Below are positions 1 through 29,700 of a stretch of 64,000 bases of DNA, one piece after another. Made by a program: the position numbers and the translations under genes. How positions within the stretch are numbered: position 1 is the first letter of the stretch; the number at the start of each line of letters is the position of its first letter. A model generated the notes under the pieces. The model had not been told where the DNA came from. It did not search any database and saw nothing but the letters and a program-made list of their open reading frames with translations. Origin of the DNA: Ylistrum balloti (taxonomy: Eukaryota); contig NW_026782188.1 of assembly GCF_031769215.1 (NCBI RefSeq), forward strand, positions 1,240,001-1,304,000, given 5' to 3'.

Positions 1-849
1 TGAAAATCCTGGTGATTTTAGTTGATAAAAACAATTATGATTTCTATCAATTGTTCACTACTTCTATCTAAATTATGCCTTCATTTGGCGATCATACGAC
101 GTTGCACGTCCATTGCATGCCATTCGTAAGGACTATATATTACTACAATAGATGTTTGCATAGTGCAACCAGGTCTTGTCACTGACTGGGAAAATTCAAA
201 ATAGCCGACATCGTACAGGTCGGAAAGTTCATCCGTTCTAAAAGTTTTGTGCAGCTTAAAATTTTTTGCGCGTATCACGATGGACGGATGATTGATGGAC
301 AGAGAGTATAAAACACGTATGCAACAAGTACACAACGGATGCATAGCGTTTTCCAACGGAGAGCACGATTTTTTTATGTTATGTTTTACATCCTCTTTGC
401 ATCCGCAAGTGCAGTGGGGCCGGGCCTTTAAGGATACGATGTACATCCGCAACATATACGAGCTACAGACGTTCTATATCCGTTATCATCCATTAAACGC
501 CCGCTGTATCCTCTCTGCATCCTCTGGGCATCCTCGTAACTCACATCCGCTGCAGCTGAAAAAAGGAAAGAGAGGGGAAAGATAAGGTAAATGGAACGTC
601 TATACATCGTTAGTAGCACGGAAATAGAAAAGATGTAAGCGTATGCATCTCGTATATAGTGTATATAAGTATTCAAAACGGACAAAGAGTTTGTATCTGG
701 GACGTATCTCGTATAATTAGGATGTCTGTAGTATATCTAGAGTATGTAGATGGACACTTAGCGGACAACTGATATTTTGTATAAAAAGGGGGAGAAAATC
801 ATCTGGATCTCAATATGAGTCGAGCTGCCGAGGCGTACAGACCTTATCA

Positions 850-1970
850 CCCTTGGTCTTCAACATCATCAGTTGTTCTCAACCATGGAGCCTGGGGTGG
901 AGGAGCAGACCTGGACAGAGTGACACGAGCTTCAGTTGGGCCTTAAGGGTTATGGAGAAGTGCTGCAATCGTCTGCTTCATCACCTGGTACTTGGCTTCG
1001 GGCAGGTCCATCGGGGTCTGGCTCACGTAGGTGATGAAGGGCTTTCAGGCCGAGGATGCCCTGTCCAAATCGACCAGCTGAGAGAGAAGCTCTGGGCTTG
1101 TCTTCATTGTATCCCTTGTCTCCAACAGTACACTGTCGTCCTCTGGAGCTGGTTCCTTCAATTGTGAGAGCAGGGTGTCATCCTCCATCGGGATCCTCAA
1201 AGTTTGGCACCACGGAGAGTGCAGCTGTCGAGGGGGTGTCTGCTGTGGGGCTCTCTGAAAAAAACCTGTCTGGCCAGGGTAAGTGGCTCCTGGCTTGAAG
1301 ATGCTTGGCTCTCTGTGGGCTGGCTGAGGAAGAGGGGTTTCAACGGGGTTGATCCTCGGTGTCGGATCTCACCCTCCAGGAATGTGCACTTGGCCATAAC
1401 GTACTTCTCCCGGTCAGTGAGCTTGACGGCGGTCTGCCCGGAATTCTTGAGGTGTAGCTTCCCATACCAAGAGTGCATGTGATTCCACCATCCAAGGAGT
1501 AATTTATGTAGTGTACCTCAGGCTCTCTGCCTTGTCTCTCCAAGCGGCCTGCTTCTTCTTTGTGTCATGGTTCAGCCTGTGACCCTTTCTCCAGAGATAC
1601 TCGTTCTCTCTCTGCCATTCCAACACATCGTCCTCATGCTACACGGAAACGGTGTACTGTGTCCTCTCTATCTTCTTCTTTCCTTGCCTCTTCCTCCCTC
1701 CGGCTGGAGCTTCTTCAGGGACTTCAGCAGGGCCTTCATGGGACTGAGCACCAGGACCTTCCGGACCTTGTTCTGGGCCTGCAGGGGATTGAGCATCAAG
1801 GCCTTCAGCAGCATGCTTCTGAGGGGCTTGATAGCCTTGGGGCTGGTCTACACAGTAGCAGCTTCACCATCAGAGTCAGGGTGTGGAGTGCTGGTTCTGG
1901 CCTTCTTCACATTTTCCGGGCTTGAACGAGTAGGCCTGGACTTACTCTTCTTGCCTGACTGACGCACCAT
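850..1970 (-). pseudogene. Decayed intronless MADF (Myb/SANT-like) gene with a BESS-like C-terminal segment, probably the accessory gene of a PIF/Harbinger transposon
   Basis: Manual minus-strand translation from ATG at 1970 across frames gives MVRQSGKKSKSR..., HEDDVLEWQRENEYLWRKGHRLNHDTKKKQAAWRDKAESL, then after a frameshift LLGWWNHMHSWYGKLHLKNSGQTAVKLTDREKYVMAKCTFL (ORF 1197..1478). This has MADF-type Trp spacing. Further on, FITYVSQTPMDLPEAKYQVMKQTIAALLH resembles BESS. It contains in-frame stops and frameshifts and forms a GC-rich island in AT-rich DNA. Confidence 0.7.
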
Positions 1971-2089
1971 GGCGTTGATACAAGGTGTAATAGAGATACA
2001 TATAAATGTACAGCCTTCTTCAATAATTATTGGATCCCAACTTACACAATTACATATTGGGAAAGCAAACTCTGCTGAAACAAACTCCA

Positions 2090-2815
2090 CCCAGACTGAG
2101 TACTGAGTGCTGTGCAGTATTCAAAAGTGTATAAATATTAAGACAGACTGTGTAGTATTGGGGCAGGCTATGTTAACACAAACTCAATGTGAGTATTGGG
2201 TAGTTTTGGGGCAGACAATGTTAACAGACTCAGTGTGAGCATTGTGCACGGAGAAGACTATGTTAATACACAGGCTCTGTGTGAGTACTGTCTCGTTTCG
2301 GGCAGAGTACTGTGTACTATGGGACAGATTCCGTTAATACACAGGCTCCTTGTGAGTACCGTACAGTATGGGGCAGAGTAGTGTGTACTATGGGACATAT
2401 TCCTTTGGTACACAGGCGCCGTGTGAGTATCGTACAGTATGGGGCAGAGTAGTGTATACTATGGGACAGATTCCGTTGGTACACAGGCTCTGTGTCGGTA
2501 CCGTACAGTATGGGGCGGAGTGCTGTATACTATGGGATAGGTTCCGTTAATACACAGGCGCCATATGAGTACCGTGCAGTATCGGGCAGAGTAGTGTATA
2601 CTATGGGACAGATTCCGTTGGTACACAGGCTCTGTGTGGGTACCGTATAGTATGGGGCAGAGTGCTGTATACTATGGGATAGGTTCCGTTAATACACAGG
2701 CGCCATATGAGTACCGTGCAGTATCGGGCAGAGTAGTGTATACTATGGGACAGATTCCGTTGGTACACAGGCGCCGTGTGAGTACCGTACAGTATGGGAC
2801 AGAGTACTGTATAAT
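2090..2815. repeat. 71-bp minisatellite, degenerate at the left end
   Basis: The GGGA anchor of the unit (tactatgggacagattccg...) recurs at 2321, 2392, 2463, 2534 and 2605, a 71-bp spacing. Confidence 0.95.
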
Positions 2816-3964
2816 ATGTAGGAAACGAACTTTATACCCTCCCAAGTGATTTTTTGATACAGAAGAGGCGAACTGCGTGTAGACTCTTTGTGTGGACGGG
2901 ATTGTTCTGTTTGACCATGTAAGACGAAGTATTGCTTTCTATTATAGTGTTTTCGTCAGCATTTGACCTTGGCATTGTTTCTTAAAGTTCACATAGAAAA
3001 ATGATACATGTACATACATTATATGTATATCAATTTACTAGATATGAAATAGGTGGCAGATGTTATCCATTACATTCCTGACTGTGTGATGTTGTCAGTG
3101 TACAACATACTTCCTAACAACTTCAGAACCCTATATAGATACAAATCAAGCGTGAAATGTATATAAAGATCAACCCCACATATCGAGGGATGTAATTTAA
3201 TTACTACATCGCGAGACTGGTAATTGCATAAATTGTATACAGTGTTTTTGATAGAACAGTTATGTCTTGCTTCTATATTTGATATATTAAATGTAATAAA
3301 GGAACGATAAGAAATGAAATAATTACATATACATAAAACACGAGATCAGGCTGATTACGACAGCTTGATGTTATAAAACATTAGGAAATGATTCACGTGA
3401 ACACTTGTGTATTTTAAAGAGTTTGTAATTGACCGAAATCTGTATTTGTACTAGTTATTTAATTTGGCATTTTATGACTTGGATGCTCTAGAGGAATCGA
3501 ACATAAACTATTACACTAAAAACGATTGTTTAACTGCCTTTGTTCATTAACATTGTCTCTGCTTTACTCGAAGACTTATTACCTCCCTTAATTTAATCAT
3601 GACATGACCGAAGGTATCCGTGTCCCTTTATAGGTTTAGTGATCGTGCGTTCCTAGCTGACGATATTTACAATGCGAGGTCTCACTTGGGATCCTGTGAT
3701 TGATACCATGATACGTGAAATAAGTATATCATATACATGTGTGTGATATGCTTTAAAAAAAACAAAAAACAAAAGTCGTACAAGGATTTGAACATATATT
3801 TTCTGTAGTCTGTCCAAGATGCTCTACTGCAGAGAAAGGACACTTTCTATAAACATAAGGTATACCTAGATAAATAGACAGTTATACTCTTGTAAATGGA
3901 CATCAGTCGTTCGTGTTCATCATAATTATACGTGGTTAAGTAAAAAATAATGGGTTATTAATGG

Positions 3965-4410
3965 CACTGAAATATACACAAACACATGTCTAAGTCTTAT
4001 GGGAACACACTCTACACACTGAAATAGATACAAACACATGTGTAAGTCTTATGGGAACACACTCTACACACTAAAATAGATACAAACACATGCCAAAGTC
4101 TTACGGGAACACACTCTACACACTGAAATAGATTCAGACACATGTCAAAGTCTTATGGGAACACACTCTACACACTGAAATAGATACAAACACATGTCAA
4201 AGTCTTATGGGAACACACTCTACACACTGAAATAGATTCAGACACATGCCAAAGTCTTATGAGAACACACTCTACACACTGAAATAGATACAAACACATG
4301 TCAAAGTCTTATGAGAACACACTCTACACATTGAAATAGATACAGACACATGGGGAAGTCTGATGGGAACACACTCTACACACTGAAATAGATACAAACA
4401 CATGTCAAAG
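3965..4410. repeat. 52-bp minisatellite, about 8 copies
   Basis: Unit catgtcaaagtcttatgggaacacactctacacactgaaatagatacaaaca; anchors at 4141 and 4193. Confidence 0.95.
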
Positions 4411-5265
4411 TTTGAAAATAGTTTTATTAGAATGAAAAGGTTTACCATGATATCACCATTTACCGTAATCTAATCTTACGGATCTCCAGAAATGTGTGTG
4501 GAAACCTGTAGACAAAAGGTCTGCCATTATAACTAATAACGATAACCTAACTCATTCAGCAGTGGAATTAGGATGTATGTTTTCGTTGATTCAAGTAGGT
4601 CAAGCAATTTTTTTCCAATAAATATGACCACCTCAAAACCTTCCCGGGCTTGTACTGTCCAGCATAGAGTACCTACTGTAATGGAGAAGCTATAAGCCAA
4701 TTAGGAATATAAGTCTCATTTCGTGTAGAGTTATGGTGTACATTACGTTCATGTCCTTCCAAAGAATACACAGATTCACTCTCAGTGGCGATCGTGTTTT
4801 TGAATGTCAAGCTGTTATACAGACGGATATAATCTGGTTTCAAAATATAGTATATGTATTAGGGTTTGTATCGATTATTGAAGAAGTCCAGGAAAGCAAA
4901 AGGATGTTTTCCCGATGGTTTTTTTTTGTAAAATGAGTGTAGTAAACCATAATTTTACAGTAGCCTTTGCCCTTCCTTATACAATATTGTGTATGCCAGG
5001 GAAAAGTTGATACTAGCGTATTATTACTGAATGAAACATGAGTATAAACATCCTGATGATCGATAAAGGAGATCTTTATCCTGCTTGAAACGAACGGCTA
5101 CATGTGTTATAGACAAAGGAAAGGATTTTTACGTATTGTTGAACATTTCTGTCTTTATTAACTGTATAAGTGGTGTTTACTTTAGGCGGTATGATACAAA
5201 TGGATATTGATTAAGTACAATATATCAAAATGAAACATAGGTGTAAATTGTTGGTTGTCATGCTT

Positions 5266-5420
5266 AACGGATGTGAACAAAGTCTAGGGTCATTCAACTG
5301 ACCAAGGGGGTTTTCTCCTGTGACCCACTCTTCCCATAGAAATTAATCTCCTACGCTTCCGCCGAACAAACCGTGAGTATAACATGGTTCAATACTGATA
5401 TGAAGTAAATAACTTTGTGT
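5266..5420 (+). mobile_element. Old 5'-truncated copy of the SINE family seen at 51455
   Basis: aacggatgtgaacaaagtctagggtca...gggttttctcctgtg aligns by eye with aacggacgtgaaaaggtaaggggtca...gggttttccccgggt of the 51455 copy. Confidence 0.55.
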
Positions 5421-7477
5421 CCGTTGACCAAGATTTAAAAGACGACGAAGTAGAAGTCGCTTGCTCTTCCGGAACACCTTTTCTTATTATCCAAGAGTCG
5501 TCGTGTAATTGTTTTTTCATAATTTGACCTACTTTCATTCAATTTGAGTTTGGATTATGATTGGCATGACGGCATTTTCTTGTTGTTTATTATCTATGTC
5601 ATTTATTTGTGAAGGACGACAAGGTCAACATCACAGTCGGTGAAGCGAATTCTTTAAGTAATCTGGTGAATCTAATGAAGGAAAACATTGGTTTTATATA
5701 TTCTGCATAGCACACTATCACTCCACTGATAGCGAGAAATAAAACTATCGAAAATGTTGACACGGATTGTTGTTTTTCGTGATAATACAAGTTCACATTT
5801 ATGTATTCTTTGGAAGTATATGCACATAATGTACAACATAACTACACGTAATGACACTTAAATTGGCTCCTAGCTTCTCCATTACTGTAGGTAATCTATG
5901 TTACTCTATTAGGGTAAATGATGCTATCAATGTAAACCTCTTTATTCTTATAAAACTATTTCAGACTTGTATATGTGTTCGTATCTATTTCAGTTATATC
6001 ATCTGTATTTTCAACTCGGCCGTAAACTATTTTGATTCCAAGCAAATCGAAAGCAAGAAGAAGACAATGGAATCAGTGGATAGGTCAGTTACATACCAAC
6101 ACATAAAGAAATATGCCTGAAGACGACAAAACCAATCTATTTCTTAAAGCCTCATTTACAAACGATTAGTTTTAAACTTCGTCTTGGGATGTCTCCATGA
6201 AATTCGATATCACAAAGAATTAAAAGAATGCCACGAAGTCATTTCTTTACCAGTAGTTACATAACAATCCTTGATATCATTTTTATCTCTGTGTCTATCA
6301 TTAGTCATTTGCATATCGCAATCGTTATGGGCACCATGGTGTAGGTGATACGGATATCAATGGAGTCAATATTCGTGTTTCATGTGGAATTTATTCGTCC
6401 ACGACAAGACAATGAGTTGAGAAATAGTCACGCAGACCTAGACAAGGTCATAGAAAAGCCGGACGGCGATGCTTTATACTGTTGTGATACCTGTTTACTG
6501 GGAACTGAAGGGATCCCTCTAATGGCTTTCGGATGAAATGAAACTATCAGATCACTTATGCATTGTGACTTAGTGATATTTTGATTTCTACTAGATTTGT
6601 TTGTTACTAAAGAAGGAAAACCGTAACCCTGTTTACAATGATTACAAATATGAAAATAGAGGAATGTACAAAAGACGCACAAGTGAAGTACAGTATCTAA
6701 TACGTGGAGTCAACACAGTCAAACATCAAACTGCATCATACAGCTGGTTAGTCCTTTTAATTAGAACCTGGTATGAATGTTACGGAAACAGTTCGTGATA
6801 ATCATTCTATGTCTTTTTACCGTTTATTGATATCTCCGATATCAATCAACAAGTGCGTAGTAAAAACCTAAAAATTGAATAAAAAAAGGCAAAGTATAGA
6901 AAAGAGGCGATAGATTATCCCGGAAATTCTTTTTAAAAATGCGAGGAGACACTGACCAAATGGTTCGGAAGGGTAAGCGTCCTTTGTTTTCTCGAATCGG
7001 ATATCATGTATATCTATATACTTACATTTCAGGTGCATATTCTCTGTTTGGCACTACCTACAAGATTGTTGAGACTTATTTCTTCGAGATTGCAGCTGGT
7101 AGACAATGCTGGTGGAGTGTTTGTCCTCAATTCATACGAATATTGGCACGGTTCAAAATATACACATGTACTTGAATATGTTCCACAATCACCAGACATA
7201 TTTAAATGATGTGAGTAGTGCATCTCCCCGTCATGTTAGGTTGCAATAATTTAGGCCCTAAAATTGCTAACGAGTTCTGGAAGTACAAACTAATTGTTTG
7301 ATGAAGTTAAACAGCTGACAGGTATCTAATGGTTCATTTTATTGAAAGATGCTATTCATTTGTATGTCTTTTGTACAATCTTAGACAGATAAAACAATTG
7401 ACAACATGTGACACTATGTATGATAATGTCAAAATATTATTTTAGTGTGTGGCATTGTTACATGAATCGAATCAACA

Positions 7478-7703
7478 TGTTGTAGGGTGCGGTCTCATTC
7501 TAGAGAAATTCTTGTTTCTGGGAGCGATATTATCATTCTTAAGAAGTTTATGTTGTAGGGTGCGGTCTCATTCTAGAGAAAGTTATGTTACTGGGAGCGA
7601 TATTATCATTCTTAAGAAGTTTATGTTGTAGGGTGCGGTCTCATTCTAGAGAAAGTTATGTTACTAGGAGCGATATTATCATTCTTAAGAAGTTTATGTT
7701 GCA
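7478..7703. repeat. 73-bp tandem repeat, 3 copies
   Basis: tgtagggtgcggtctcattctagagaaa recurs at 7481, 7554 and 7627. Confidence 0.95.
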
Positions 7704-9052
7704 GAATGCGTACATGTTACTTGTAAAATGCTTTCCCACAAAGCACTAAATAATTGATGTATTAAGAATCAGCTTGAAAACCGGATACCTGCGAGTGAAA
7801 GACTAGATGATGAAACGTAACTTTTTTTGGGGGGGGGGGGGGATATACTCGTGGATATTCGGTCTCAAATAAATCATCTTTCATACATACTGTGTATTTA
7901 GTCAGTTTGAAAGTTGCTGATTCCATGCCGTTTCGTATTTTAGTTGAGTTGTTCAATCTAGTTTTGTAAAAGGTCAATAGGATTGAAAGCTTGTGTTAGA
8001 ACTGGCGGGTCCTGTCGTTTCCACATGATTGAACAGCGTGATTCTTATTCTTTAAATTAACTATGTTTTGATCTTTGACAGCTGTATTTGACATTGGGCA
8101 CAGGTGATTTGGTATGTCTAGACTGATTAACGCAATATTGTTCGAATATTGCGACCGGCTTCAATTTCTTGGAATCTGAACACTTTCACAGACTAGAATT
8201 CCTAATTATTCTGATAAATAGATGTCGAGAACTGACGCGAAAAACTACCTCCACACAAAACGCTGGTCTTGGAGATACAGCAGTTTCCAATTGGTCTGCT
8301 CGATGTGAGACATGAAGACAGATTTGTTCGAGGTTTGCAAGTATGCGATATTAACCAGGCTCTCAATTTGAGAACATCTTATTCTACTTTGGTGGTAAAG
8401 GTTGTCAGATTTCATGTTTACCGAAGACTGCACAAAGGACACATCTCAAAAGCACCTTTAAATACAAATTTGGAATTAAATACAGTAGAGACAAACAGTG
8501 ATTTGAACTGCATTTATACAATTGTCGGACTCGTCAGTGATGAAAGGAACCTAAAGTTTGAAGCCTAGGAGGCGACTGTGGAAAATCCCAAGTGATCGAG
8601 AGGAAAGTCAAAACCTAGATAGGGACCTGCACTAGCTCAATAAGTCGATCAATTTCGCTTTTTCATTTATCTAAAAATGAATTTCCATTTTGAGAGACAT
8701 GTCATGTCGAGCACATCATATTGCCTAAGCTCCGAATAATGAATTTATTAGACTTACTTTCTTTTTTTAACACTAAAAAAGTGTAAAATGCAAATGTACT
8801 AATTTAAGTGCACAGATATTGATATCGAAAACGTATTTACCATAGAAATATCATAATACTTCATGAATATTTAATATTCCATATAATTGTAGGAAAATCT
8901 GGTCTCATTCGTCTTTTTTGTATTTTGACCTTGTGAATTTGAGCTGAAGATTCTAAATGGCATATCGGTATTTTGTTTGTTTTATCTATTTTTTTAATGA
9001 AATGCGTTATTTCAATAACTTTTCAAAACATTAGATGTTCCAGTCAGCATAA

Positions 9053-9217
9053 NNNNNNNNNNNNNNNNNNNNNNNNNNNNNNNNNNNNNNNNNNNNNNNN
9101 NNNNNNNNNNNNNNNNNNNNNNNNNNNNNNNNNNNNNNNNNNNNNNNNNNNNNNNNNNNNNNNNNNNNNNNNNNNNNNNNNNNNNNNNNNNNNNNNNNNN
9201 NNNNNNNNNNNNNNNNN
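9053..9217. other. Assembly gap (165 N)
   Basis: Run of N. Confidence 1.
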
Positions 9218-10002
9218 ATATTGGTTTGTGTGTCATGTCTTGTCTTTTTATGTATATGATAAAAGAAAAAAGAAAAAAAAAGGAATTTCCAGTTATTAGG
9301 GGATTGTATTGAACACAGCACGTGACATGTATCACCTGTAAATACCCAAAACGGTGTTATACACAGCACTCTCCAAAAACATCAGATATCTCCCACCACT
9401 ATGATATGAATTTTCGACCACACCTTTAAAGTACCCCTTTCCTGGGATCAGTACCTCTTTGTATTCGCTACAGTTTCTACATACATTTATGTACATATCT
9501 ACATTTCTGCCTGGAAAGCTTTCTAATCAGTCACTCAAATAGAAGTGGATGGTGAACACGACCCCGACACCGCAATACTATAGCAGAAGGACCGATGACC
9601 AGATGTACCACTTAAACCCACTTACGATATTGTGAAATTGTGACGATCATTTCAGTTAGTAATAGTGTATAATTAACGCTTTAATACTTTTTGTATTTAT
9701 GATTATCTAAATGGAGTGTTTCGCAGACAAATGAACCAGAATAGAAGAGGTCTGTATGCTATGTTTGCCCTGTATAAGGTATTTCGAACATTGAGACTCT
9801 ATTTGGTGTACTGTGCAGTGACAATAATCGAGCGAAATTTTATTTTGCTATGTAAGCGATCATTAAATCAACTTATAACGGTGGAACAAAACGTCAGAAA
9901 TCTGTGTTAAATTTTAGTTAAAGTCAGTGTAGAAAGAGACATAGCGCTGAACTATGCCAGAGGACCTATTTCAACTCCTTGCCTAAATCGATCTGAATAC
10001 AA

Positions 10003-18200: not shown

Positions 18201-19520
18201 AATTTTGAGGAGGCGACTGAGGCAAAACAACACAAATTTGTCAAACTTTCGATACAGAGATTCGCTAGCCTAAAAATACAAATAATTTCATCAGCTAATA
18301 ATTTCATATTATATCATATACTGAACCGTGTGTATAGTCAGTGTGTATATTAATTACAACATGGCATGAGGGTTATCACAAACGTTAGGGGACTTAAAAG
18401 TCCACCAGTGACGTCATCAATTTACGAGCATTCATCTGTCACCATAAAAATACTTGATAGGAAAATATATTGTGTAATATGAAGTTAACGGTGTTTGGTG
18501 CTCGTTAATATGCATGGTGGTTTCGTTGTTGTTCATTTAGGAACTTTTATCCTCACGATATATCAGTCTTAAGGTCATTGAACTTGTTTCAGGACTATCT
18601 ATGTAAATCGTCCTTTTGTTCATATTTCGCCCACGATTTACATTTGAATGTAGATGCTTTTAACATTTCGGTATTTTTGTTTTTGGATGCTAAATAACGC
18701 CCCCACACAAGCCAATTCTATCATTCACACCGTTGTACACCACGAGAACTGGAACGTGCTTTATCAATCCAACAAAAGTGGTTTGTTACCTTTGTATGGA
18801 TATATCTTACATGTGCCTGCATCACAATAGTAAGAGAAGTCTCTAAAGACTGATACTATTAATAATACTGGTAGCATTGCTATTTTTTTCAAATCTATGT
18901 GTATGTACAGTTCATCGGGCTGTTTACAACACCGAGAGGTAATATTTTTAACTGTTGACAGTTACATGAATTATCCAAAACAATCAGTTATTGACCAATT
19001 ATGCTAAGAATTAGACTTCTCTACCTGTACGGTAAGCTATACCTAGAATAAGATTACATCGCGGTCAAAAAGACGCTTTTTAGAAATCGTTTGAACGCTT
19101 GGGCGCTATATCGGCTTGACACGATTTGATATACCAGTTTCTACGGAAATAAGAGAAACAATTTTTAATTTACATTCTGGTAAAGTAGTTATTTAATCAT
19201 GATGACAGAAATGGGTTAGGTTTTCATAAACTGGTCACTATTTAATCATTAGACAGAGTAGATTGCTGACTGTAAATCTGCTATCATCCGGAGAAACTTC
19301 AAAGCAATTCTTATTTAAAGTGTACCTAGATTACGGTATAGTATTAATTAATATTAATTATGTTTCCTTTCTTATTAAAAAAATCGGAAACCCGGTCAAA
19401 ATTTGTCGCTTAGTTTTTGAGATATTTGTCGTTAAATTCACCGTTCGGAACCGGTTTGCACCTGTCGATGGAGGCTAATTAACACACTTCCCAACTTCCG
19501 GTTAACAGACCGGAAAATCC

Positions 19521-19540
19521 CGTGACGTCACAAGGGTAGC
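19521..19540 (+). promoter_or_regulatory. Left copy of a 20-bp subterminal inverted motif containing the CRE palindrome TGACGTCA
   Basis: CGTGACGTCACAAGGGTAGC; its exact reverse complement is at 23489-23508. Confidence 0.7.
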
Positions 19541-19560
19541 GCTTGGTCTAAGAAATGATA

Positions 19561-20944
19561 ATGTCGGACAGTGATAACAGCGAGTGCGAGTGGTTCGAAG
19601 ACTCAAACAATTCGGAAGAATGCAGCCTGAATTTAAGCTTTGAATCTTCTGATTACGACACGGAGGTTATAGAGAGACAAGCTGGTATTCAACCATACCA
19701 ATTTGAACCCGAGGTAGATGGTGAAAGCAGTCCATCTTCACCTGCGTCGTCTACACGTAGCGATGATAATGCTGATCGCCTGGGATCCTTAGACTGGTAT
19801 GTTCAGAGATGTTAGCTTTCACGTATGATTATTTTTTTTCCAGGAATTTTCCCTTTTCAAAATGCATCGTGCATGTTAACAAATGCGGATTTTCAGGATT
19901 TTTTCTCCACTTGCTCAACCTCACAAGTCCGACTTTGTCGAGATAATAACAGCCAATGCCTTTTTTTTGCATTTACAAATATTTGACTTTTACATAATAC
20001 CCACCCCTAAATATTTTGTGTTACATAAATTAATGTGCATAGCATTTCTTTTTACAAAGGAGAACATTTCCTGGAAACAAAGTGTATTCTTTTGCTATGT
20101 CAAATGGTACTTGTATGTACTATAAAGTGTTGAATAGAAAACTTCTAACAAGACATTTTAAAGGTATTTTCACACCAACATACTAGTGAATTATGTATAA
20201 AACACAGAAAATTTTATATGTTACAGGTGTCTTTGCGGTAACTGCAGTCTTATGCCTACCATTGAGGAGTGCAGGTGCTGTAGTGAGATACACAGTGTAC
20301 TGAACACAAAAGACGACATACCAGGGATACAGTGCATAACAGACCATCCTGGATTTGGGCCAGTCTGTTTGGATATTTATGTGCTGAGAACATCTTATTT
20401 CCAGTACAGACAACTTCATGGAGAGATACCAGAATGCCCTGAGTAAGTTATGATGTTTATCTACAGCATCAAATTTATTATTATAAAACTTGAAACATAA
20501 TAAAATAATTCATTTGTTAAGAAGATATTTTAAAAATGATGTTACAAACTTGTCTATCAAGTTACAGGTCTAAAATACTGCAAAAGAACCAATAACCAGA
20601 CAAGATAAAATAGATTTTCAATAATAAGTCAACATTTCTGAAAATCTGGTTTGGAATTGTTACACATATGTATTGTAGAGTTACTTGTGTTTACCATAAT
20701 TCACTAGTGCTTGCATCCTCCGCAGATTAATGGCAAACTTGGCATTAACAATGATTACAGAATATATTTTTCTTGTTTTATCAGGAGATACCGCTATACA
20801 GCATACAGACAATTTGTGAGATGGTGTTGGGGGTACTTGGGAAAAAGCATAAGAGTGCCATTACCTGCGTGTGCTGTGAAGATTATTAGAGAAACATTTC
20901 CTGCACCAAATGGAAATTTTAAAGGTTTTAATTTTGTGCATTAA
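19561..20944 (+). CDS. KolX-like Cys-rich protein similar to the P2X7 C-terminal ballast / Zn-coordinating cysteine domain; 3 exons, 203 aa, intact
   Basis: Exons 19561-19796, 20227-20442 and 20785-20944 total 612 nt, all GT-AG with phases 2/2; an alternative in-frame ATG lies at 19555. Protein has an acidic N-terminus with PYQFEP, then DW-CLCGNCSLMPTIEECRCCSEI, CITDHPGFGPVCLDIYVL and RYRYTAYRQFVRWCWGYLGKSIRVPLPACAVKIIRETFP. Confidence 0.88.
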
Positions 20945-21300
20945 AAATATGTGTTGAAAACATTAAAAGAATGACATGAAACAATAAAATTATAATTGAT
21001 ATCTGATTGTTGTTTTTTATTCATATATACAATTGAAACTGTAATAGGATCTGTAAGTCTCGTCATGTGACCTACTAGAACATACCTCTTAACTTGAACA
21101 ATCATAACTATGAAAACGGAGGATTACCAGTAGGTACGTTTTTAAAAACTCCTTGGGAAATGTGCATTTTGTCGAAATTGAAAATACTTTTCTTCTATAA
21201 GACTACTACCTAAAACGTCAGTTGGTACACAGAAGTAAAGTAAAACAGACTTGCAGACCATATTAAAAAACAGATGAAAATTCATGTACATGTATGTATT

Positions 21301-23304
21301 TTAAATGTTCATGTTAAATCTTGATTCCATCAATGCGACAGCTTCCATTTTTACAGGTCTGACAAAATCACTACAGAGTGGTGGGGGTTGGTCTTTAAGT
21401 AGCATATCCTCCACTTGCATCGTACTTTTTTCTGCCACTTGTAGCACTTCTGCCATCAGTTCATGTACATAGTCTGTAAGATAAAAAGTACATATACAAG
21501 TACACTGGTTTTATTATTTTTTCCAATCACTATTACACAAAATCTGACACTATTGCTAGTAAAGACTTTAAATGTTTTGTATACATGGACATATTTTCCT
21601 GCAACTAAAATGCAAGTTGTTAATTGAAGAATCATGTACTGCAATATATAGAATACTGAACCTAACCTAAAATATTGAACTCGTCTTCATATGCAACATA
21701 ATACTTACCAAATGTTTGTTTTGTTTTGACTTTTCTGACAGTGTATCCACCTTTCTTCTGTTTAGGGTAGATTATCTTAAACATTTTCTCCCCAGCAGAT
21801 GTCATGGCTTGTTCTCTTCTCACATTTTCATTGTGGTGAAGTGCAGCTAGAATCACCCTATTCAAAGAGATGCAACAATATTTAAACTTTCCTGATTAAG
21901 TATCATCAATATCTTAAGAATTAAGACTGGCTGCCTAAATCTTTTACATACTCATTTTAACATATCTTACATCTAGCTACAACACTAAATCTCTTTTAAC
22001 ATTGCAATATTCACCACAGGAGTTTTGAGACAGGTAGACTACTAGTGAATAATGATATTTCCACAACCTGTTGATGATGTTAGATCTTGAGACAGATATA
22101 CATATACGATCAACTTGTCTGTACAAATTGATGTCTAAAGAAATAATAGTCTTATGAGAATCATGTGATCATATACCTGCACAACATTCCATTGAATGAA
22201 AAGCCATGTATTTTAGGGGCAAACTGGTTAACTGTTGAGTGGTACCCTTCTAGTTCTGAAGTTTGGTGATGTGTTGATAGCATGGGAATGTCCTTTTTCA
22301 TTTGTGGTGATGTCAACATCAGTTCTAGCTTCTCCATTACTTTACTCTCTGAAAAGTGAAAGTGAGGATTTCAAATGATGAAGTAAAAATATAATATGGG
22401 ATCATAAGGAATTTAGAACACGAATATTAATTCCATGCTAAGAACAAGAAACTAAAGATACCATTTTCCTGGATGTGCTTTTCATTCAGGTGAAAAATGT
22501 CATTGCTAAAGAAATTAGGCACTTAAAATGTTTTTAAGCAAGTGATAAATGTCATTCGTAATTTAGTTATGATTTGAATTATTGATACGTCACCAATTTC
22601 GAACCAAATGAATAAGTAAGCAAGTTAAAGGTAGGATACACAATAATTGAGTCAATGCCATAACAGGAAAAATACCTGGTTTTATCCATTTCTTCTTCCT
22701 TTCCTGTGTTCTCAAGTCATCATGCAGACAGCAAGGAAACAGATCTGAAGATACCTCGCATACACTGAAACATTTACTGGGAAAAGGTTTATTAAATGCT
22801 TAATAGGAGTATTGTCCACTAAGGAAGGCTGCATTACTCATTACCTTTTCTACTCAGATACTACTATAACTTATATGATATACATAGGCCCTAGATCTTC
22901 ATGTATTATGTAATAATTACCCTTCTGTTCTCTCTTTTTGCGAAAGCAGTCCGTGGTCTTTTGACAGGCGTTTCCTCTACGTTGGTGCAGCCTTTGTTAA
23001 TCGTTGGCACAGCATCTTTTATTAGCGTTTTCTTTTTCGGTGGTGTACGTCCCATTGATTGAAGAAATCTGTACTGCATCGGGTAGCAGTCCTCACCGAA
23101 ATGTTCCGAACACAAAACTGAATGTTTTGTTGGCCCGTCCCACAAATCCCTTTTCCTCCGCACAAATGCAGTCCAAACTTTGCATATTTCCGGTCTGTCT
23201 AATGGGAAAAAATGAAGTGAAACACCGTCTAAAGTGGTGTTTCCACATCCATACGCTACACATCTCTTCCCACGTGAACGTTTGTTGGTCGGAGTCGCTT
23301 CCAT
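21301..23304 (-). pseudogene. Kolobok transposase gene with internal deletion; THAP exon and four C-terminal exons retained
   Basis: Exon 22921-23304 is a THAP domain (CVAYGC...LHFFP...W...LCSEHF...DAVPTI). Exons 22676-22764 (DLFPCCLHDDL...KKKWIKP), 22177-22348 (QTSELEGYHSTVNQFAPK), 21709-21857 (VILAALHHNEN...PKQKKGG) and 21301-21473 (PPPLCSDFVRPVKMEAVALMESRF) splice in frame with each other. The THAP exon ends in phase 0 and the next exon needs phase 2; only 156 bp separate them. Confidence 0.85.
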
Positions 23305-23488
23305 AGTTAAGCTAATACTTCGAATTTCGCACGTTTTGAATAAAAATAAATATCACTTGATACGCACAAATATGGTAGGATATAAATACAGGACGAGAAG
23401 TATGAAGATTAAACAACCAAACGTCTGTTTCACATATTTTCGACAGTCTACACGCGAAAGTTACCTGGCATGGCGGGTCGTCCCAAAT

Positions 23489-23508
23489 GCTACCCTTGTG
23501 ACGTCACG
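23489..23508 (-). promoter_or_regulatory. Right copy of the 20-bp subterminal inverted motif
   Basis: GCTACCCTTGTGACGTCACG, the exact reverse complement of 19521-19540. Confidence 0.7.
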
Positions 23509-24514
23509 AGCAAATAGAGCCTCGATTTGATGTGAGAGCGGTTTATTCAAAGGTATGTTTTTCGGTTTTTGCCGTAAAGCATAAAAACTATAAAACTGAA
23601 ATGATTTTTTTATATATATTTATGAACGTCTATATACATACCAATTAACAACTATAAATAAACATGTAATCTAGGTACACTTTAAGTTGGTTAAAAGGTG
23701 ACCAGCTAGACACAATGGACTGGTCATCGTTAGCATGGATACACGTGATTCTGATAAACAAATCCATTTGTTCACCACAGCAACAGATACCTGTGCAACA
23801 CTTTAATTCACCAACATATTGGCACAATCCGACATCACAGCCATGATCTTTGGTATGTTGATCACTTTTTAACACGAGATATGTCGACCTGGTGAATGCA
23901 GGGCAGATCGAAGTAGAATTTGGAATTCTGTTGTGCAAAATTTAACGTCCTGAATATACATATAAATCTGCCTCATGACCATTAACACCAGAGGAAACAA
24001 CCTGTGACAGAGGTGGTGTATTTCCCTAGGTGATGGCTTACATTGTATGAAATGTTCTGCTGCCAATTAGTCCAGTCACATTTATCTCCCAAGGCGTGAC
24101 ATTTACTTTGATAGCAGATATTAATATTTTCGAGTAACTTTTAGAGCAACACATTGATCACGTGACAATTATATATCAGACACACATAAAACATTCTTAT
24201 AATTAATGTCAAGAATTACTGACGCTACAAGAAGTTAACGGTAGACCAGACATCTGCCTGGAAGGTCAGCGGGATTTATTGGTTTTGTCGTATTAGGTAC
24301 GTCGTCATCAGAACAGCCATTGTTTCAGTTTATTGTATTGAAAAAAGATGACGCAAAATACTTCATAAATTTTATTCTTAGGTTTGCATAAGTTAAAAAC
24401 TACATTGGCATGAAATATGTTTGCTGAGAAACATACCAGTATTGTACATCTGTAACAGTAGATCGCGTGATCAAGGTTGGGGTCAGAGAGTCGGGTTCAA
24501 TATTTAAGGGAAAG

Positions 24515-26700: not shown

Positions 26701-29700
26701 TCAGTATCCTCCACCTCGTCCTCTGCCACCTCGACCACTTCCTTTTCTTCCTCTACCCCCTCGTCCTCCACCCCCTCCTCCTCCTTGATAATTATCACTT
26801 TGTCCACCTTGATGATAACCTCCTCCTCCTCCTTGGCCACCATAGCCACCACCCTGGTTACCATAGCCTCCTCCTTGGCCACCATAGCCACCACCCTGGT
26901 TACCATAGCCTCCTCCTTGGCCACCATAGCCACCACCCTGGTTACCATAGCCTCCTCCTTGACCACCATAGCCACCACCTTGGTTACCATAGCCACCGCC
27001 CTGGTTACCATAGCCACCCCCACCTCTCCCTTGGTTGTAACCACCGCCACCTTGACCCCAGTTGCCACCTTGTTGGTTGGGATTTGCATCACCCCATCCT
27101 CCTTGCACCTTTCCTCCTCTTCCTCCACCTCCACCTCCACCTCCTCGACCCCGACCACCTCCATGTCCACCTAATACAAAAGTAATCATGTGATCTGATG
27201 AAGATAAGAACATAAAGAAACACTGTGTTGTGTCGCAGTTTCATTTTACCAAAGTTACTGCACAATCATAATTTCCATATCTAAACCATCCTAGATTTGT
27301 TTTATGTTGTTAGGGCTGAAGCAAGAGATCAGTTTTAGTTATGCTGAATATTACGATGTCTTGCAGAAAATGCTGTCATACATTGGAAGTGTTTACACAT
27401 CAATAACAATGATTCCAATATGTTTGCAAATTTGCTAAAACTGCAAAGTTTCTACAGTGCTGTCATTTAACCAGCTCTGATATCTATACATAGTTATCAG
27501 ATTTTTTTTCTGTGTGTATTTTGTATATTTCTTTGTTATTTGTGATGACATTAATGGATAGTCTTTAAGTACATTTAACAACATATCTATACACTGTTGG
27601 CACTCACTTTGTGGTCGCTGTGGTGCCGCCTCCCTCTTCATAAAGGACGGCATTTCTGGCGGAGGTGGCTCTAGTTCCCATGCCCGACCTCCTCTGTCTG
27701 GTACCTACCAGCAACAAAATGCACTGTTGTTTCAAAGGTTTCAAACTGTGAACTACATTCATTGAAATTAAAATGAACATTTTCCATACCATCTTTTAAC
27801 TTTAAAATAATATATACAAAATATTACAAATGTTGTAATCAATTCTCACAACAAATTGGACAGTTTTCTGACACTGGTTACCTCCCCTCATTCTGCCTAC
27901 CTTTGGTATGAGGACTCTGTTTATGGCACACTTTGTTTTCTCCCTGGCATCACCACTGCTAGTCTTCTCTAGGCGTGTCAAGTCTTGAGAAATAACATAC
28001 AGAATGATAAGGACTAATAGACCTGACTATAATACTGTCTAGTCTTAGAAAATAGCAAACATGGAGGACTACATCTGTTGGTACTAAGAGGAGATAACAA
28101 AACAGTCTTGTCGGTGAAAACAATGGAGGACTGTTTTTGTTGGTAGTGAGAGGAAATAACAAAACAGTCTTGTCGGAGAAAACAATGGGGGACTGTTTTT
28201 GTTGGTAGTGAGAGGAAATAACAAAACAGTCTTGTCGGAGAAAACAATGGGGGACTGTTTTTGTTGGTAGTGAGAGGAAATAACAAAACAGTCTTGTCGG
28301 AGAAAACAATGGGGGACTGTTTTTGTTGGTAGTGAGAGGAAATAACAAAACAGTCTTGTCGGAGAAAACAACGGGGGACTGTTTTTGTTGGTAGTGAGAG
28401 GAAATAACAAAACAGTCTTGTCGGAGAAAACAACGGGGGACTGTTTTTGTTGGTAGTGAGAGGAAATAACAAACCAGTCTTGTCGGAGAAAACAACGGGG
28501 GACTGTTTTTGTTGGTAGTGAGAGGAAATAACAAAACAGTCTTGTCGGAGAAAACAATGGGGGACTGTTTTTGTTGGTAGTGAGAGGAAATAACAAAACA
28601 GTCTTGTCGGAGAAAACAACGGGGGACTGTATTTGTTGGTAGTGAGAAGAAATAACTAACCAGTCTTGTCGGAGAAAACAACGGGGGACTGTTTTTGTTG
28701 GTAGTGAGAGGAAATAACAAAACAGTCTTGTCGGAGAAAACAATGTAGTTAGATGACATTCAGGTACTTTACATTTGGCTGTATTCATGACTGATAGAAT
28801 TTCACAATATTTGCTGTCAATAAAGAAAATGGGGCATTATATCATGAAACAATCTTACCCTAAGAAACAACCAACAAAGACGACTGTTAATTGTGAGAGT
28901 TAAGAGAGAACAGGTGTCTTTGGAAATGACATATGATCATTGGATATATAAAGAGAAAATGAATTTCTAATCTGAAGCCAACGCTAAACTTCTTAAACAC
29001 CTATCTAATTGCATTTTCATATACAAATATTTTCATCAAATCTCTACCACATACTCACCGTCCCTAGCTGAAAGGATTTGAGCAACTCCTATGGCTGGTT
29101 TTGTCTGAAGACTTTTTCGAACGGGTTGATATACTGCAGCAATATCATTTTCTTTTTGCTAAAAAGAAAGAATAATGAATCTAAGTCCCGTTCTTCAATG
29201 ATGTATATATTATGTGTGTGGTGATCTTGTTTAAGTCTGTAAGCACAACAAGATCAAATATGATCAAAGGGAGGTAATATTGTTGTAATAGCAAATATAC
29301 CTAATAATGACCAATACGAAACCATATCATACCTGATAATCCTCAGGAGACCTTGTGAAGTCATTTCATAGTTTACTTTCTTGCATAGACACTTTCAAAA
29401 TGGAAATCATGATAAAGTCGGAGAATCAAAATAACGACCAATGCTCAGACAGACAATACTGATGTAAAATTTAAAAGCGGTGATACTCAGTTTTATGTTC
29501 ACATAATGTTTAAACTTTCAAGGACATTTTTTAAATGGAAATCATGAGAAAAAGACATACATCTACCCTAATTTGAAAATATAAAACTATATTTAGTGTA
29601 TGTAAATCACATGGTGAAGTGTTCTGGGAAATATATCTACATACAAAGTAGATGATTTTTAGGACATTTGGTATTACATTACACAACAAAGCAACCTAGA

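What the first reader, a model, noticed from the sequence alone, without database searches (positions are those of the whole stretch)
19315..23685. Complete-ended Kolobok transposon with two convergent spliced genes
Seen: perfect 16-bp TIRs, an unmutated TTAA TSD and no stop codon in any retained exon of either gene. Established: Kolobok elements have RR termini, TTAA TSDs, a THAP DDE transposase and a second gene, KolX. Inference: a young insertion still mobilisable in trans, possibly presence/absence polymorphic. The predicted empty site is ...aattcttatt-TTAA-gttggttaaaagg...
Basis: partly seen in the sequence, partly recalled or inferred. Interest (0 to 1): 0.7.

Follow-up and report, generated by a model that had tools for sequence, protein, structure and literature searches.

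The report
Gutted young Kolobok transposon copy
This is a real, very young copy of an already described kind of jumping gene (a two-gene Kolobok DNA transposon) in a scallop genome that has lost the 3.1-kb catalytic middle of its transposase gene; it is an ordinary decayed copy that can only move with help from its full-length sisters.

Summary
Window 19315-23685 has perfect 16-bp inverted ends (AG...CT), each flanked by TTAA. It carries two inward-facing spliced genes.

It is a Kolobok DNA transposon of the Kol0 lineage in the scallop Ylistrum balloti. The plus-strand gene is an intact three-exon KolX gene of 205 codons, related to the P2X7 "ballast" domain. The minus-strand gene is only a remnant of the THAP-DDE transposase gene.

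Full-length sister copies of about 7.45 kb, 99.2-99.8% identical, lie on other contigs. Compared with them, the window copy lacks 3,090 bp, with the junction at 22745 and 1 bp of microhomology. The loss covers the exon-2 acceptor, the variable exons, both catalytic-D exons and two thirds of the zinc-finger exon. The only simple product left is a THAP-only protein of about 131 residues.

The family is small: 9 left and 10 right ends in the assembly, at different sites, mostly flanked by TTAA. That rules out a domesticated single locus.

In four public DNA runs the right-flank contigs diverge from the window exactly at the TTAA, and none follows the deletion junction. The insertion is therefore probably absent there and polymorphic, but no empty-site joint was reported.

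This is a known kind of element and an ordinary mode of decay. The scan has already noted several Koloboks in this genome.

The parts
19315..19318 (.). Left copy of the TTAA target-site duplication
19319..19334 (+). Left 16-bp terminal inverted repeat, starting AG (the RR terminus)
   Evidence: Perfect complement of 23666-23681. The same end is found at 8 other loci.
19521..19546 (+). Left copy of a 26-nt subterminal inverted box holding the palindrome TGACGTCA (at 19523). It ends 9 bp upstream of the KolX ATG.
   Evidence: Inverted pair I1, 92% complementary; CRE positions
19555..19796 (+). KolX exon 1: acidic N-terminus, ends with a split codon TG|G and donor GTATGT
20227..20442 (+). KolX exon 2: Cys-rich part (WCxCGxC ... 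ECxCC ... CIT.HPGF)
   Evidence: Translation. By eye it fits the KolX rows of Fig. S6 of PMC9587614.
20785..20944 (+). KolX exon 3 with stop codon; an AATAAA signal follows at 20983
   Evidence: Pfam P2RX7_C 1.5e-9, 38.5 bits against a cut-off of 23.5. Matches P2X7 residues 544-593 in solved structures, E 0.005. Coordinates.
21301..21473 (-). Last transposase exon (F), retained and open, stop at 21301-21303
   Evidence: tblastn of bivalve homologues; splice sites read
21709..21857 (-). Transposase exon E, retained and open
22177..22348 (-). Transposase exon D with the third catalytic residue (motif ELEGYHS), retained and open. One private substitution at 22209 (I for M).
   Evidence: motif compared by eye with the Kolobok-1_XT and Kolobok-1_BF rows of Data S5
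22676..22745 (-). 3' third of transposase exon C; the H2CH zinc motif is cut in two by the deletion
22745..22746 (.). Junction of the 3,090-bp internal deletion (full-length copy L031 positions 4170-7259 missing), with 1 bp (C) of microhomology
22746..22920 (-). Remaining 5' part of transposase intron 1 (donor GTAATT at 22920). The exon-2 acceptor is deleted.
22921..23304 (-). Transposase exon 1: complete THAP DNA-binding domain, 128 codons
   Evidence: Pfam THAP 8.8e-15, covering positions 1-87 of the 87-position model. The exon end is confirmed by the NCBI gene model on a sister copy.
23483..23508 (-). Right copy of the 26-nt subterminal box with TGACGTCA (at 23499), about 180 bp upstream of the transposase ATG
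23666..23681 (-). Right 16-bp terminal inverted repeat (ends ...CT)
23682..23685 (.). Right copy of the TTAA target-site duplication. Contigs of four public runs start matching the flank exactly here.

Best explanation
Window 19315-23685 is a non-autonomous, internally deleted copy (4,363 bp plus two TTAAs) of a young two-gene Kolobok DNA transposon of about 7.45 kb, of the Kol0 lineage, in the scallop Ylistrum balloti.

Shown:
- It has complete ends and a TTAA duplication.
- It has an intact KolX gene.
- Its transposase gene keeps the THAP exon and the last three and a third exons. It has lost 3,090 bp that hold both catalytic aspartate exons.
- Sister copies about 99.2-99.8% identical, with all conserved exons open, exist elsewhere in the genome.

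Inferred:
- A full-length element integrated by cut-and-paste at a TTAA.
- The middle was lost by interrupted gap repair or end joining, given the 1-bp microhomology. This happened either at this locus or before insertion.
- The copy can now be excised and reinserted only if transposase from a full-length copy binds its intact ends.
- On its own the transposase remnant can encode at most a THAP-only protein of about 131 residues.
- The insertion is probably not fixed in the species.
For: Ends and duplication.

Family census: 9 left ends (7 flanked by TTAA) and 10 right ends (8 flanked by TTAA), all at different flanks.

Structure relative to full-length copies:
- Copies on contigs C698, C339, C578 and C185 carry an extra 3,090 bp at window position 22745.
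- That segment holds the exons with GDGRCDTPGH, TDRH and DVWH.

Homology:
- The first catalytic exon has 3,381 homologues, the best in other bivalves (55% identity). Long homologues carry THAP plus the same core.
- The motifs fit the Kolobok-1_XT and Kolobok-1_BF rows of the published Kolobok alignment.

KolX: Pfam P2RX7_C, P2X7 structures and the published KolX alignment.

Published definition of the family: TTAA duplication, RR/YY ends and a KolX gene in the Kol0 lineage (PMC9587614); AG ends and the THAP, DDE and H2CH motifs (PMC6004289).

Frames: all conserved exons are open in the full-length copies. Joining the exon-1 donor to the exon-D acceptor gives RVK-stop, and read-through gives VIIT-stop.

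A second, independent deletion derivative on C566 has its own TTAA pair. NCBI annotates it as a 152-residue THAP-only protein.

Reads: in four runs the right-flank contigs begin matching exactly at 23682 and carry 69-275 further letters that do not lie on the element. At 22745 all listed contigs follow the full-length sequence.
Against: - No 19318-to-23682 joint was listed by read laying, so the empty site itself was not seen. The 200 bp left of the insertion have very high contig depth and break the contigs.
- Contigs drop rare variants, so absence of the deletion junction in reads is weak evidence.
- The only two complete full-length copies (C698, C339) lack TTAA flanks, and C698 lacks the last 4 bp of one end. 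Whether any copy is itself mobile is unknown.
- The variable middle exons of the transposase were not defined, so 'intact helper' is shown only for the conserved exons.
- No RNA data were available.
- Similarity to named Kolobok transposases was judged by eye against a published alignment, not scored.
Confidence: 0.9

Rival explanations
1. The deletion, or the whole insertion at this site, is an assembly artefact. The real locus would hold a full-length copy or none.
For: None of the four public runs shows a contig across the 22745 junction or across either element-flank junction. The deleted form is single-copy in the assembly.
Against: The runs come from other haplotypes, with about 1% differences in the flanks. 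The copy carries 8 private substitutions spread along its length and a clean 1-bp-microhomology junction. A sister copy has an independent deletion of the same type. Collapsed-repeat errors do not normally produce a perfect TTAA pair.
Confidence: 0.05
2. The locus is a domesticated, fixed Kolobok-derived host locus that keeps KolX and a THAP protein for host use.
For: KolX is intact and the THAP exon is intact. Kolobok transposases and KolX have been domesticated elsewhere (PMC6004289, PMC9587614).
Against: About ten near-identical copies lie at different loci with their own TTAA flanks. The ends are perfect. Read contigs of four samples leave the element exactly at the TTAA. At 0.2-0.6% divergence from its sisters there has been no time for selection to show.
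Confidence: 0.02
3. It is an autonomous, currently active element.
For: Both ends are perfect and no retained exon has a stop codon.
Against: Both catalytic aspartate exons and half of the zinc motif are deleted. The remaining exons cannot be joined in frame through the natural splice sites.
Confidence: 0.01
4. It is a piggyBac-type element, the other superfamily with a TTAA duplication.
For: TTAA duplication. A few piggyBac families also carry a KolX-like gene (PMC9587614).
Against: The ends are AG...CT, the Kolobok RR/YY rule. There is no piggyBac transposase domain in Pfam, and the weak hits go to the MULE and Mutator models. The THAP domain and the core motifs match Kolobok-1_XT and Kolobok-1_BF.
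Confidence: 0.01

Closest known systems
Kolobok superfamily, Kol0 lineage (type element Kolobok-1_XT; Kapitonov and Jurka 2007, as described in Kojima and Bao 2022, PMC9587614)
   Same: TTAA duplication, AG...CT ends and a THAP-DDE transposase with the C/DxxH and H2CH motifs. A second gene, KolX, is related to the P2X7 cytoplasmic ballast. The two genes are transcribed inward from the ends.
   Different: This is a new host (a scallop) and a family with its own 16-bp ends. The window copy lacks the catalytic exons. The paper's list of Kol0 hosts names vertebrates, annelids, cnidarians and sponges, not molluscs, although Kolobok as a whole is known from molluscs.
Xenopus XKol elements and T2-MITEs (Hikosaka et al. 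2018, PMC6004289)
   Same: AG termini and TTAA flanks. Full-length copies of 7-14 kb occur beside internally deleted non-autonomous relatives and show recent activity.
   Different: The Xenopus non-autonomous forms are short, high-copy MITEs. Here the derivative is 4.4 kb, single-copy, and still carries an intact KolX gene.
KP elements of the Drosophila P element (internally deleted copies encoding a THAP-only repressor; from my own knowledge)
   Same: An internal deletion leaves the N-terminal THAP DNA-binding domain as the only translatable part of the transposase.
   Different: It belongs to a different superfamily. Neither expression nor any repressor activity is shown here, and the copy is single, not amplified.

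Membership tests
Kolobok superfamily | [quoted passage not shown] | tested here: met
   TTAA lies on both sides of the window copy. In the genome, 7 of 9 left ends and 8 of 10 right ends are flanked by TTAA.
Kolobok superfamily | Termini 5'-RR ... YY-3' (AG in Xenopus Koloboks) | tested here: met
   The element starts AGTG and ends CACT. The rule is taken from PMC9587614 and PMC6004289.
Kolobok superfamily | [quoted passage not shown] | tested here: met
   Met in the full-length sister copies: GDGRCD, TDRH, DVWH and ELEGYHS. In the window copy only the E exon survives.
Kolobok superfamily | Transposase core alignable with reference Kolobok transposases | tested here: met
   Compared by eye with the Kolobok-1_XT and Kolobok-1_BF rows of Data S5 of PMC9587614. 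The blocks around the first D, the second D, DVWH, NHL-W, KKW and LE-HS all match. No score was computed, because reference sequences may not be typed into the tools.
Kolobok superfamily | N-terminal THAP domain and H2CH zinc motif | tested here: met
   THAP 8.8e-15, full model length, with an AVPTI box. H-x4-H ... C-x2-H is present in exon C of the full-length copies and is split by the deletion in the window copy.
Kol0 lineage of Kolobok | Second gene KolX with the P2X7 cytoplasmic-ballast fold | tested here: met
   Pfam P2RX7_C 1.5e-9, above the cut-off. P2X7 chains match at E 0.005. The Cys pattern fits the published KolX alignment.
Autonomous (self-mobilising) element | Complete transposase reading frame | tested here: not met
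   The 3,090-bp deletion removes exons 2 to B and part of exon C. The surviving splice sites give a frameshift.
piggyBac superfamily | piggyBac-type transposase and its characteristic termini | tested here: not met
   No piggyBac domain appears in Pfam scans of the exons or of long homologues. The ends follow the Kolobok rule.
KP-like THAP-only repressor | A truncated product that is expressed and lowers transposition | not testable with these tools
   Only the coding potential is shown: exon 1 followed by an early stop by either route, and a 152-residue NCBI model on the sister deletion copy. No RNA run holds the stretch.

The most novel reading that the evidence does not exclude
The THAP-only proteins left by the window copy and by the independently deleted C566 copy bind the family's ends or its twin CRE-containing boxes. 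In that way they would damp transposition of the full-length copies, a Kolobok counterpart of the P-element KP repressor.
Probability: 0.08. Interest if true: 0.5.

Novelty: new member of a known kind. Interest (0 to 1): 0.2.

Why it matters
The finding gives a clean, dated example of how a Kolobok family decays. The same genome holds full-length copies, two independent deletion derivatives and one-ended fragments, all within about 0.8% of each other. The family is small and young, and it keeps an intact KolX gene whose function is unknown, so it is convenient material for testing what KolX does. It does not change what is known about Kolobok elements.

Tried and rejected
- I looked for an empty-site haplotig in the assembly using both flanks. 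Only the locus itself matched.
- I looked for paralogous empty sites. The flanks of the window copy are not part of a repeat that the genome search can see.
- Read laying reported no empty-site joint. That tool and the look-up of sequencing runs are capped at one call each, so no second look was possible.
- The joint '21043/22745, opposite strands' is explained by a 95-bp inverted, 76%-similar copy of 21043-21137 inside the deleted segment. It is not a rearrangement.
The gene neighbourhoods of the bivalve homologues could therefore not be checked.
- Names of homologues gave nothing. All are 'uncharacterized' or 'hypothetical'.
- Pfam has no Kolobok model. It gave only sub-threshold MULE, Mutator and ISL3 hits.
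- KolX exons 1 and 2 have no Pfam or structure match on their own.
- The N run near 9050-9300 was left alone.

Full report
**Observation**

The stretch 19315-23685 begins TTAA-AGTGTACCTAGATTAC and ends with the exact reverse complement. The repeat finder reports the two 20-nt arms as 100% complementary, 4,331 nt apart. By my own arithmetic, about 1e-5 such pairs are expected by chance in 5 kb. The same boundaries recur in other copies.

**The two genes**

*KolX, plus strand.* The gene has three exons with GT-AG introns and consistent phases: 19555-19796, 20227-20442 and 20785-20944. Together they make 618 nt, or 205 codons.
- The last exon matches Pfam P2RX7_C at 1.5e-9, 38.5 bits against a cut-off of 23.5.
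- It also matches residues 544-593 of solved P2X7 receptors.
- Kojima and Bao 2022 (PMC9587614) showed that the second protein of the Kol0 lineage of Kolobok, KolX, is exactly this P2X7 ballast relative.
- By eye, exons 2 and 3 fit their KolX alignment block by block: WCxCGxC, ECxCC, CIT.HPGF, YR..AYRQ, LG...R.

*Transposase, minus strand.*
- Exon 1 (23304-22921) is a complete THAP domain (Pfam 8.8e-15).
- Three further open exons lie at 22348-22177, 21857-21709 and 21473-21301. They match the C-terminal part of bivalve homologues.

**What is missing**

The element was searched against the window's own genome (648.5 Mb; the window is C331:1240001-1304000). This found copies on C698, C339, C578 and C185 that align 99.2-99.8% to the window copy or to one another. 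Each carries an extra 3,090 bp at window position 22745. The junction has 1 bp of microhomology.

I used homologues found with HMMER (3,381 hits; the best is a Mizuhopecten protein at 55% identity, and an 871-residue Mya arenaria protein has THAP plus the core). With these I mapped the exons of the full-length copy L031.
- The deleted segment holds the rest of intron 1 with the exon-2 acceptor.
- It holds the acidic variable exons.
- It holds the exon with GDGRCDTPGH (first D).
- It holds the exon with TDRH and DVWH (second D and the C/DxxH signature).
- It holds the first two thirds of the exon with the H2CH zinc motif.

These blocks, together with ELEGYHS in the retained exon D, match the Kolobok-1_XT and Kolobok-1_BF rows of the published Kolobok transposase alignment. 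This was a by-eye comparison, because reference sequences could not be typed into a tool.

In the window copy, joining the exon-1 donor (phase 0) to the next natural acceptor (exon D) gives RVK-stop. Read-through gives VIIT-stop. The remnant can therefore encode only a THAP-only protein of about 131 residues.

**The family**
- The assembly holds 9 left ends and 10 right ends, all with different flanks. Seven and eight of them, respectively, are flanked by TTAA.
- There are complete or near-complete full-length copies on C698, C339, C578 and C185. C578 has lost its right end and the ATG. C185 is cut by its contig start.
- C566 holds a second deletion derivative with a different breakpoint and its own TTAA pair.
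- There are older relatives at 91-98% identity and several one-ended fragments.
- All conserved transposase exons are open in the four long copies.
- The window copy has 8 private substitutions in 4,363 bp, one of them a conservative change in exon D.

These data refute a domesticated single locus and support a recently active family.

**Host**

A protein search with the THAP exon returned an NCBI model of Ylistrum balloti: 152 residues, 98% identical, on a contig of 1,344,093 bp. That is C566. This model joins exon 1 to 24 codons of exon 2 and then stops at that copy's deletion. It confirms the exon-1 donor and shows that the sister derivative is also read as THAP-only.

Kolobok is known to be common in bivalves (PMC10294476). 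The genome has at least 48 P2RX7_C matches.

**Polymorphism**

Nine public runs hold the stretch. Four were laid on 18515-24485, which is 5,971 letters and within the operators' limit. All are contig sets.
- In every run the right-flank contig starts matching at 23682, the first T of the TTAA. It carries 69-275 more letters that do not lie on the element. A contig from an occupied site would include about 26 nt of the element end.
- At 22745 all listed contigs end or start, and the loose ends read on into the full-length sequence. None follows the deletion.
- At seven of the eight private positions the contigs show the family letter; 22064 and 22801 are not among the listed differences, and 20123 is listed although the assembly copies agree there.

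Taken together this suggests that the copy is absent from these four samples.

Caveats:
- No 19318-to-23682 joint was listed.
- The 200 bp left of the insertion have very high depth and break the contigs.
- One run has no depth on 18515-19114.
- Contigs cannot prove absence.
- No haplotig with the empty site exists in the assembly.

**Mechanism**

Shown: intact ends, a TTAA duplication, loss of the catalytic exons, and full-length sisters with open conserved exons.

Inferred:
- Integration was cut-and-paste at a TTAA.
- The internal loss arose by interrupted gap repair or end joining.
- Any future movement depends on transposase supplied in trans.

Because the deleted form is single-copy, nothing shows that it has moved since the deletion. 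It may simply mark where a full-length copy once sat.

**Comparison and verdict**

Every defining Kolobok and Kol0 feature that could be tested was met. The piggyBac and autonomous-element readings fail. This is a new family member of a known kind, decaying in the usual way.

Earlier notes of this scan describe several other Koloboks in this genome, including an intact two-gene copy, other gutted copies, KolX genes and a twin CRE box. The scan has therefore found this kind before on other DNA. My own data agree with those notes where I tested them.

Noticed in passing
L032 (G000:C339:3209900-3218900), element at about 738-8173; L031 (G000:C698:771000-780000), element at about 742-8196: The only two complete full-length copies lack TTAA flanks. 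C339 reads ACCT-[element]-GATA. It sits inside an older dispersed repeat whose other copies read AC(T)TTAATTAT-GAT at that point, so there is no duplication and 6-10 bp of target are missing. C698 reads GACA on the left, and its right end lacks the last 4 bp. Either integration was non-canonical or the flanks eroded later.
   Followed up: partly
window 19521-19546 and 23483-23508: A 26-nt inverted pair (92% complementary) containing the CRE palindrome TGACGTCA lies upstream of both genes, 9 bp before the KolX ATG and about 180 bp before the transposase ATG. I confirmed only its presence here.
   Followed up: partly
L034 (G000:C566:1173500-1178700), element 721-4453: This is a second, independent deletion derivative of the same family. 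It lacks full-length positions 2642-6366 and has TTAA on both sides. NCBI annotates it as LOC132557684, a 152-residue THAP-only protein.
   Followed up: yes
window 19115-19314 and 18515-19114: In the read contigs, the 200 bp left of the insertion have 234-784x depth against 15-17x for the flanks, although the genome search finds no other copy. One run (X5) has no contig at all on 18515-19114. There may be a further structural polymorphism beside the insertion.
   Followed up: no
window 21043-21137 and the deleted segment (e.g. G000:C185:3214-3308): The full-length element contains an inverted, 76%-similar copy of this 95-bp stretch inside the segment the window copy has lost. It causes the 'opposite strands' joint reported by read laying.
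   Followed up: partly
window 26701-27213 (minus strand) and 27959-28788: A long glycine-rich GGGYGNQ-repeat reading frame, and a tandemly repeated open frame of about 130 nt period, lie 3-5 kb right of the element. They were not examined.
   Followed up: no
G000:C578:13602-13748: Another P2RX7_C (KolX-like) match lies 1.4 kb beyond the point where the C578 full-length copy is truncated. This suggests nested or adjacent Kolobok elements there.
   Followed up: no
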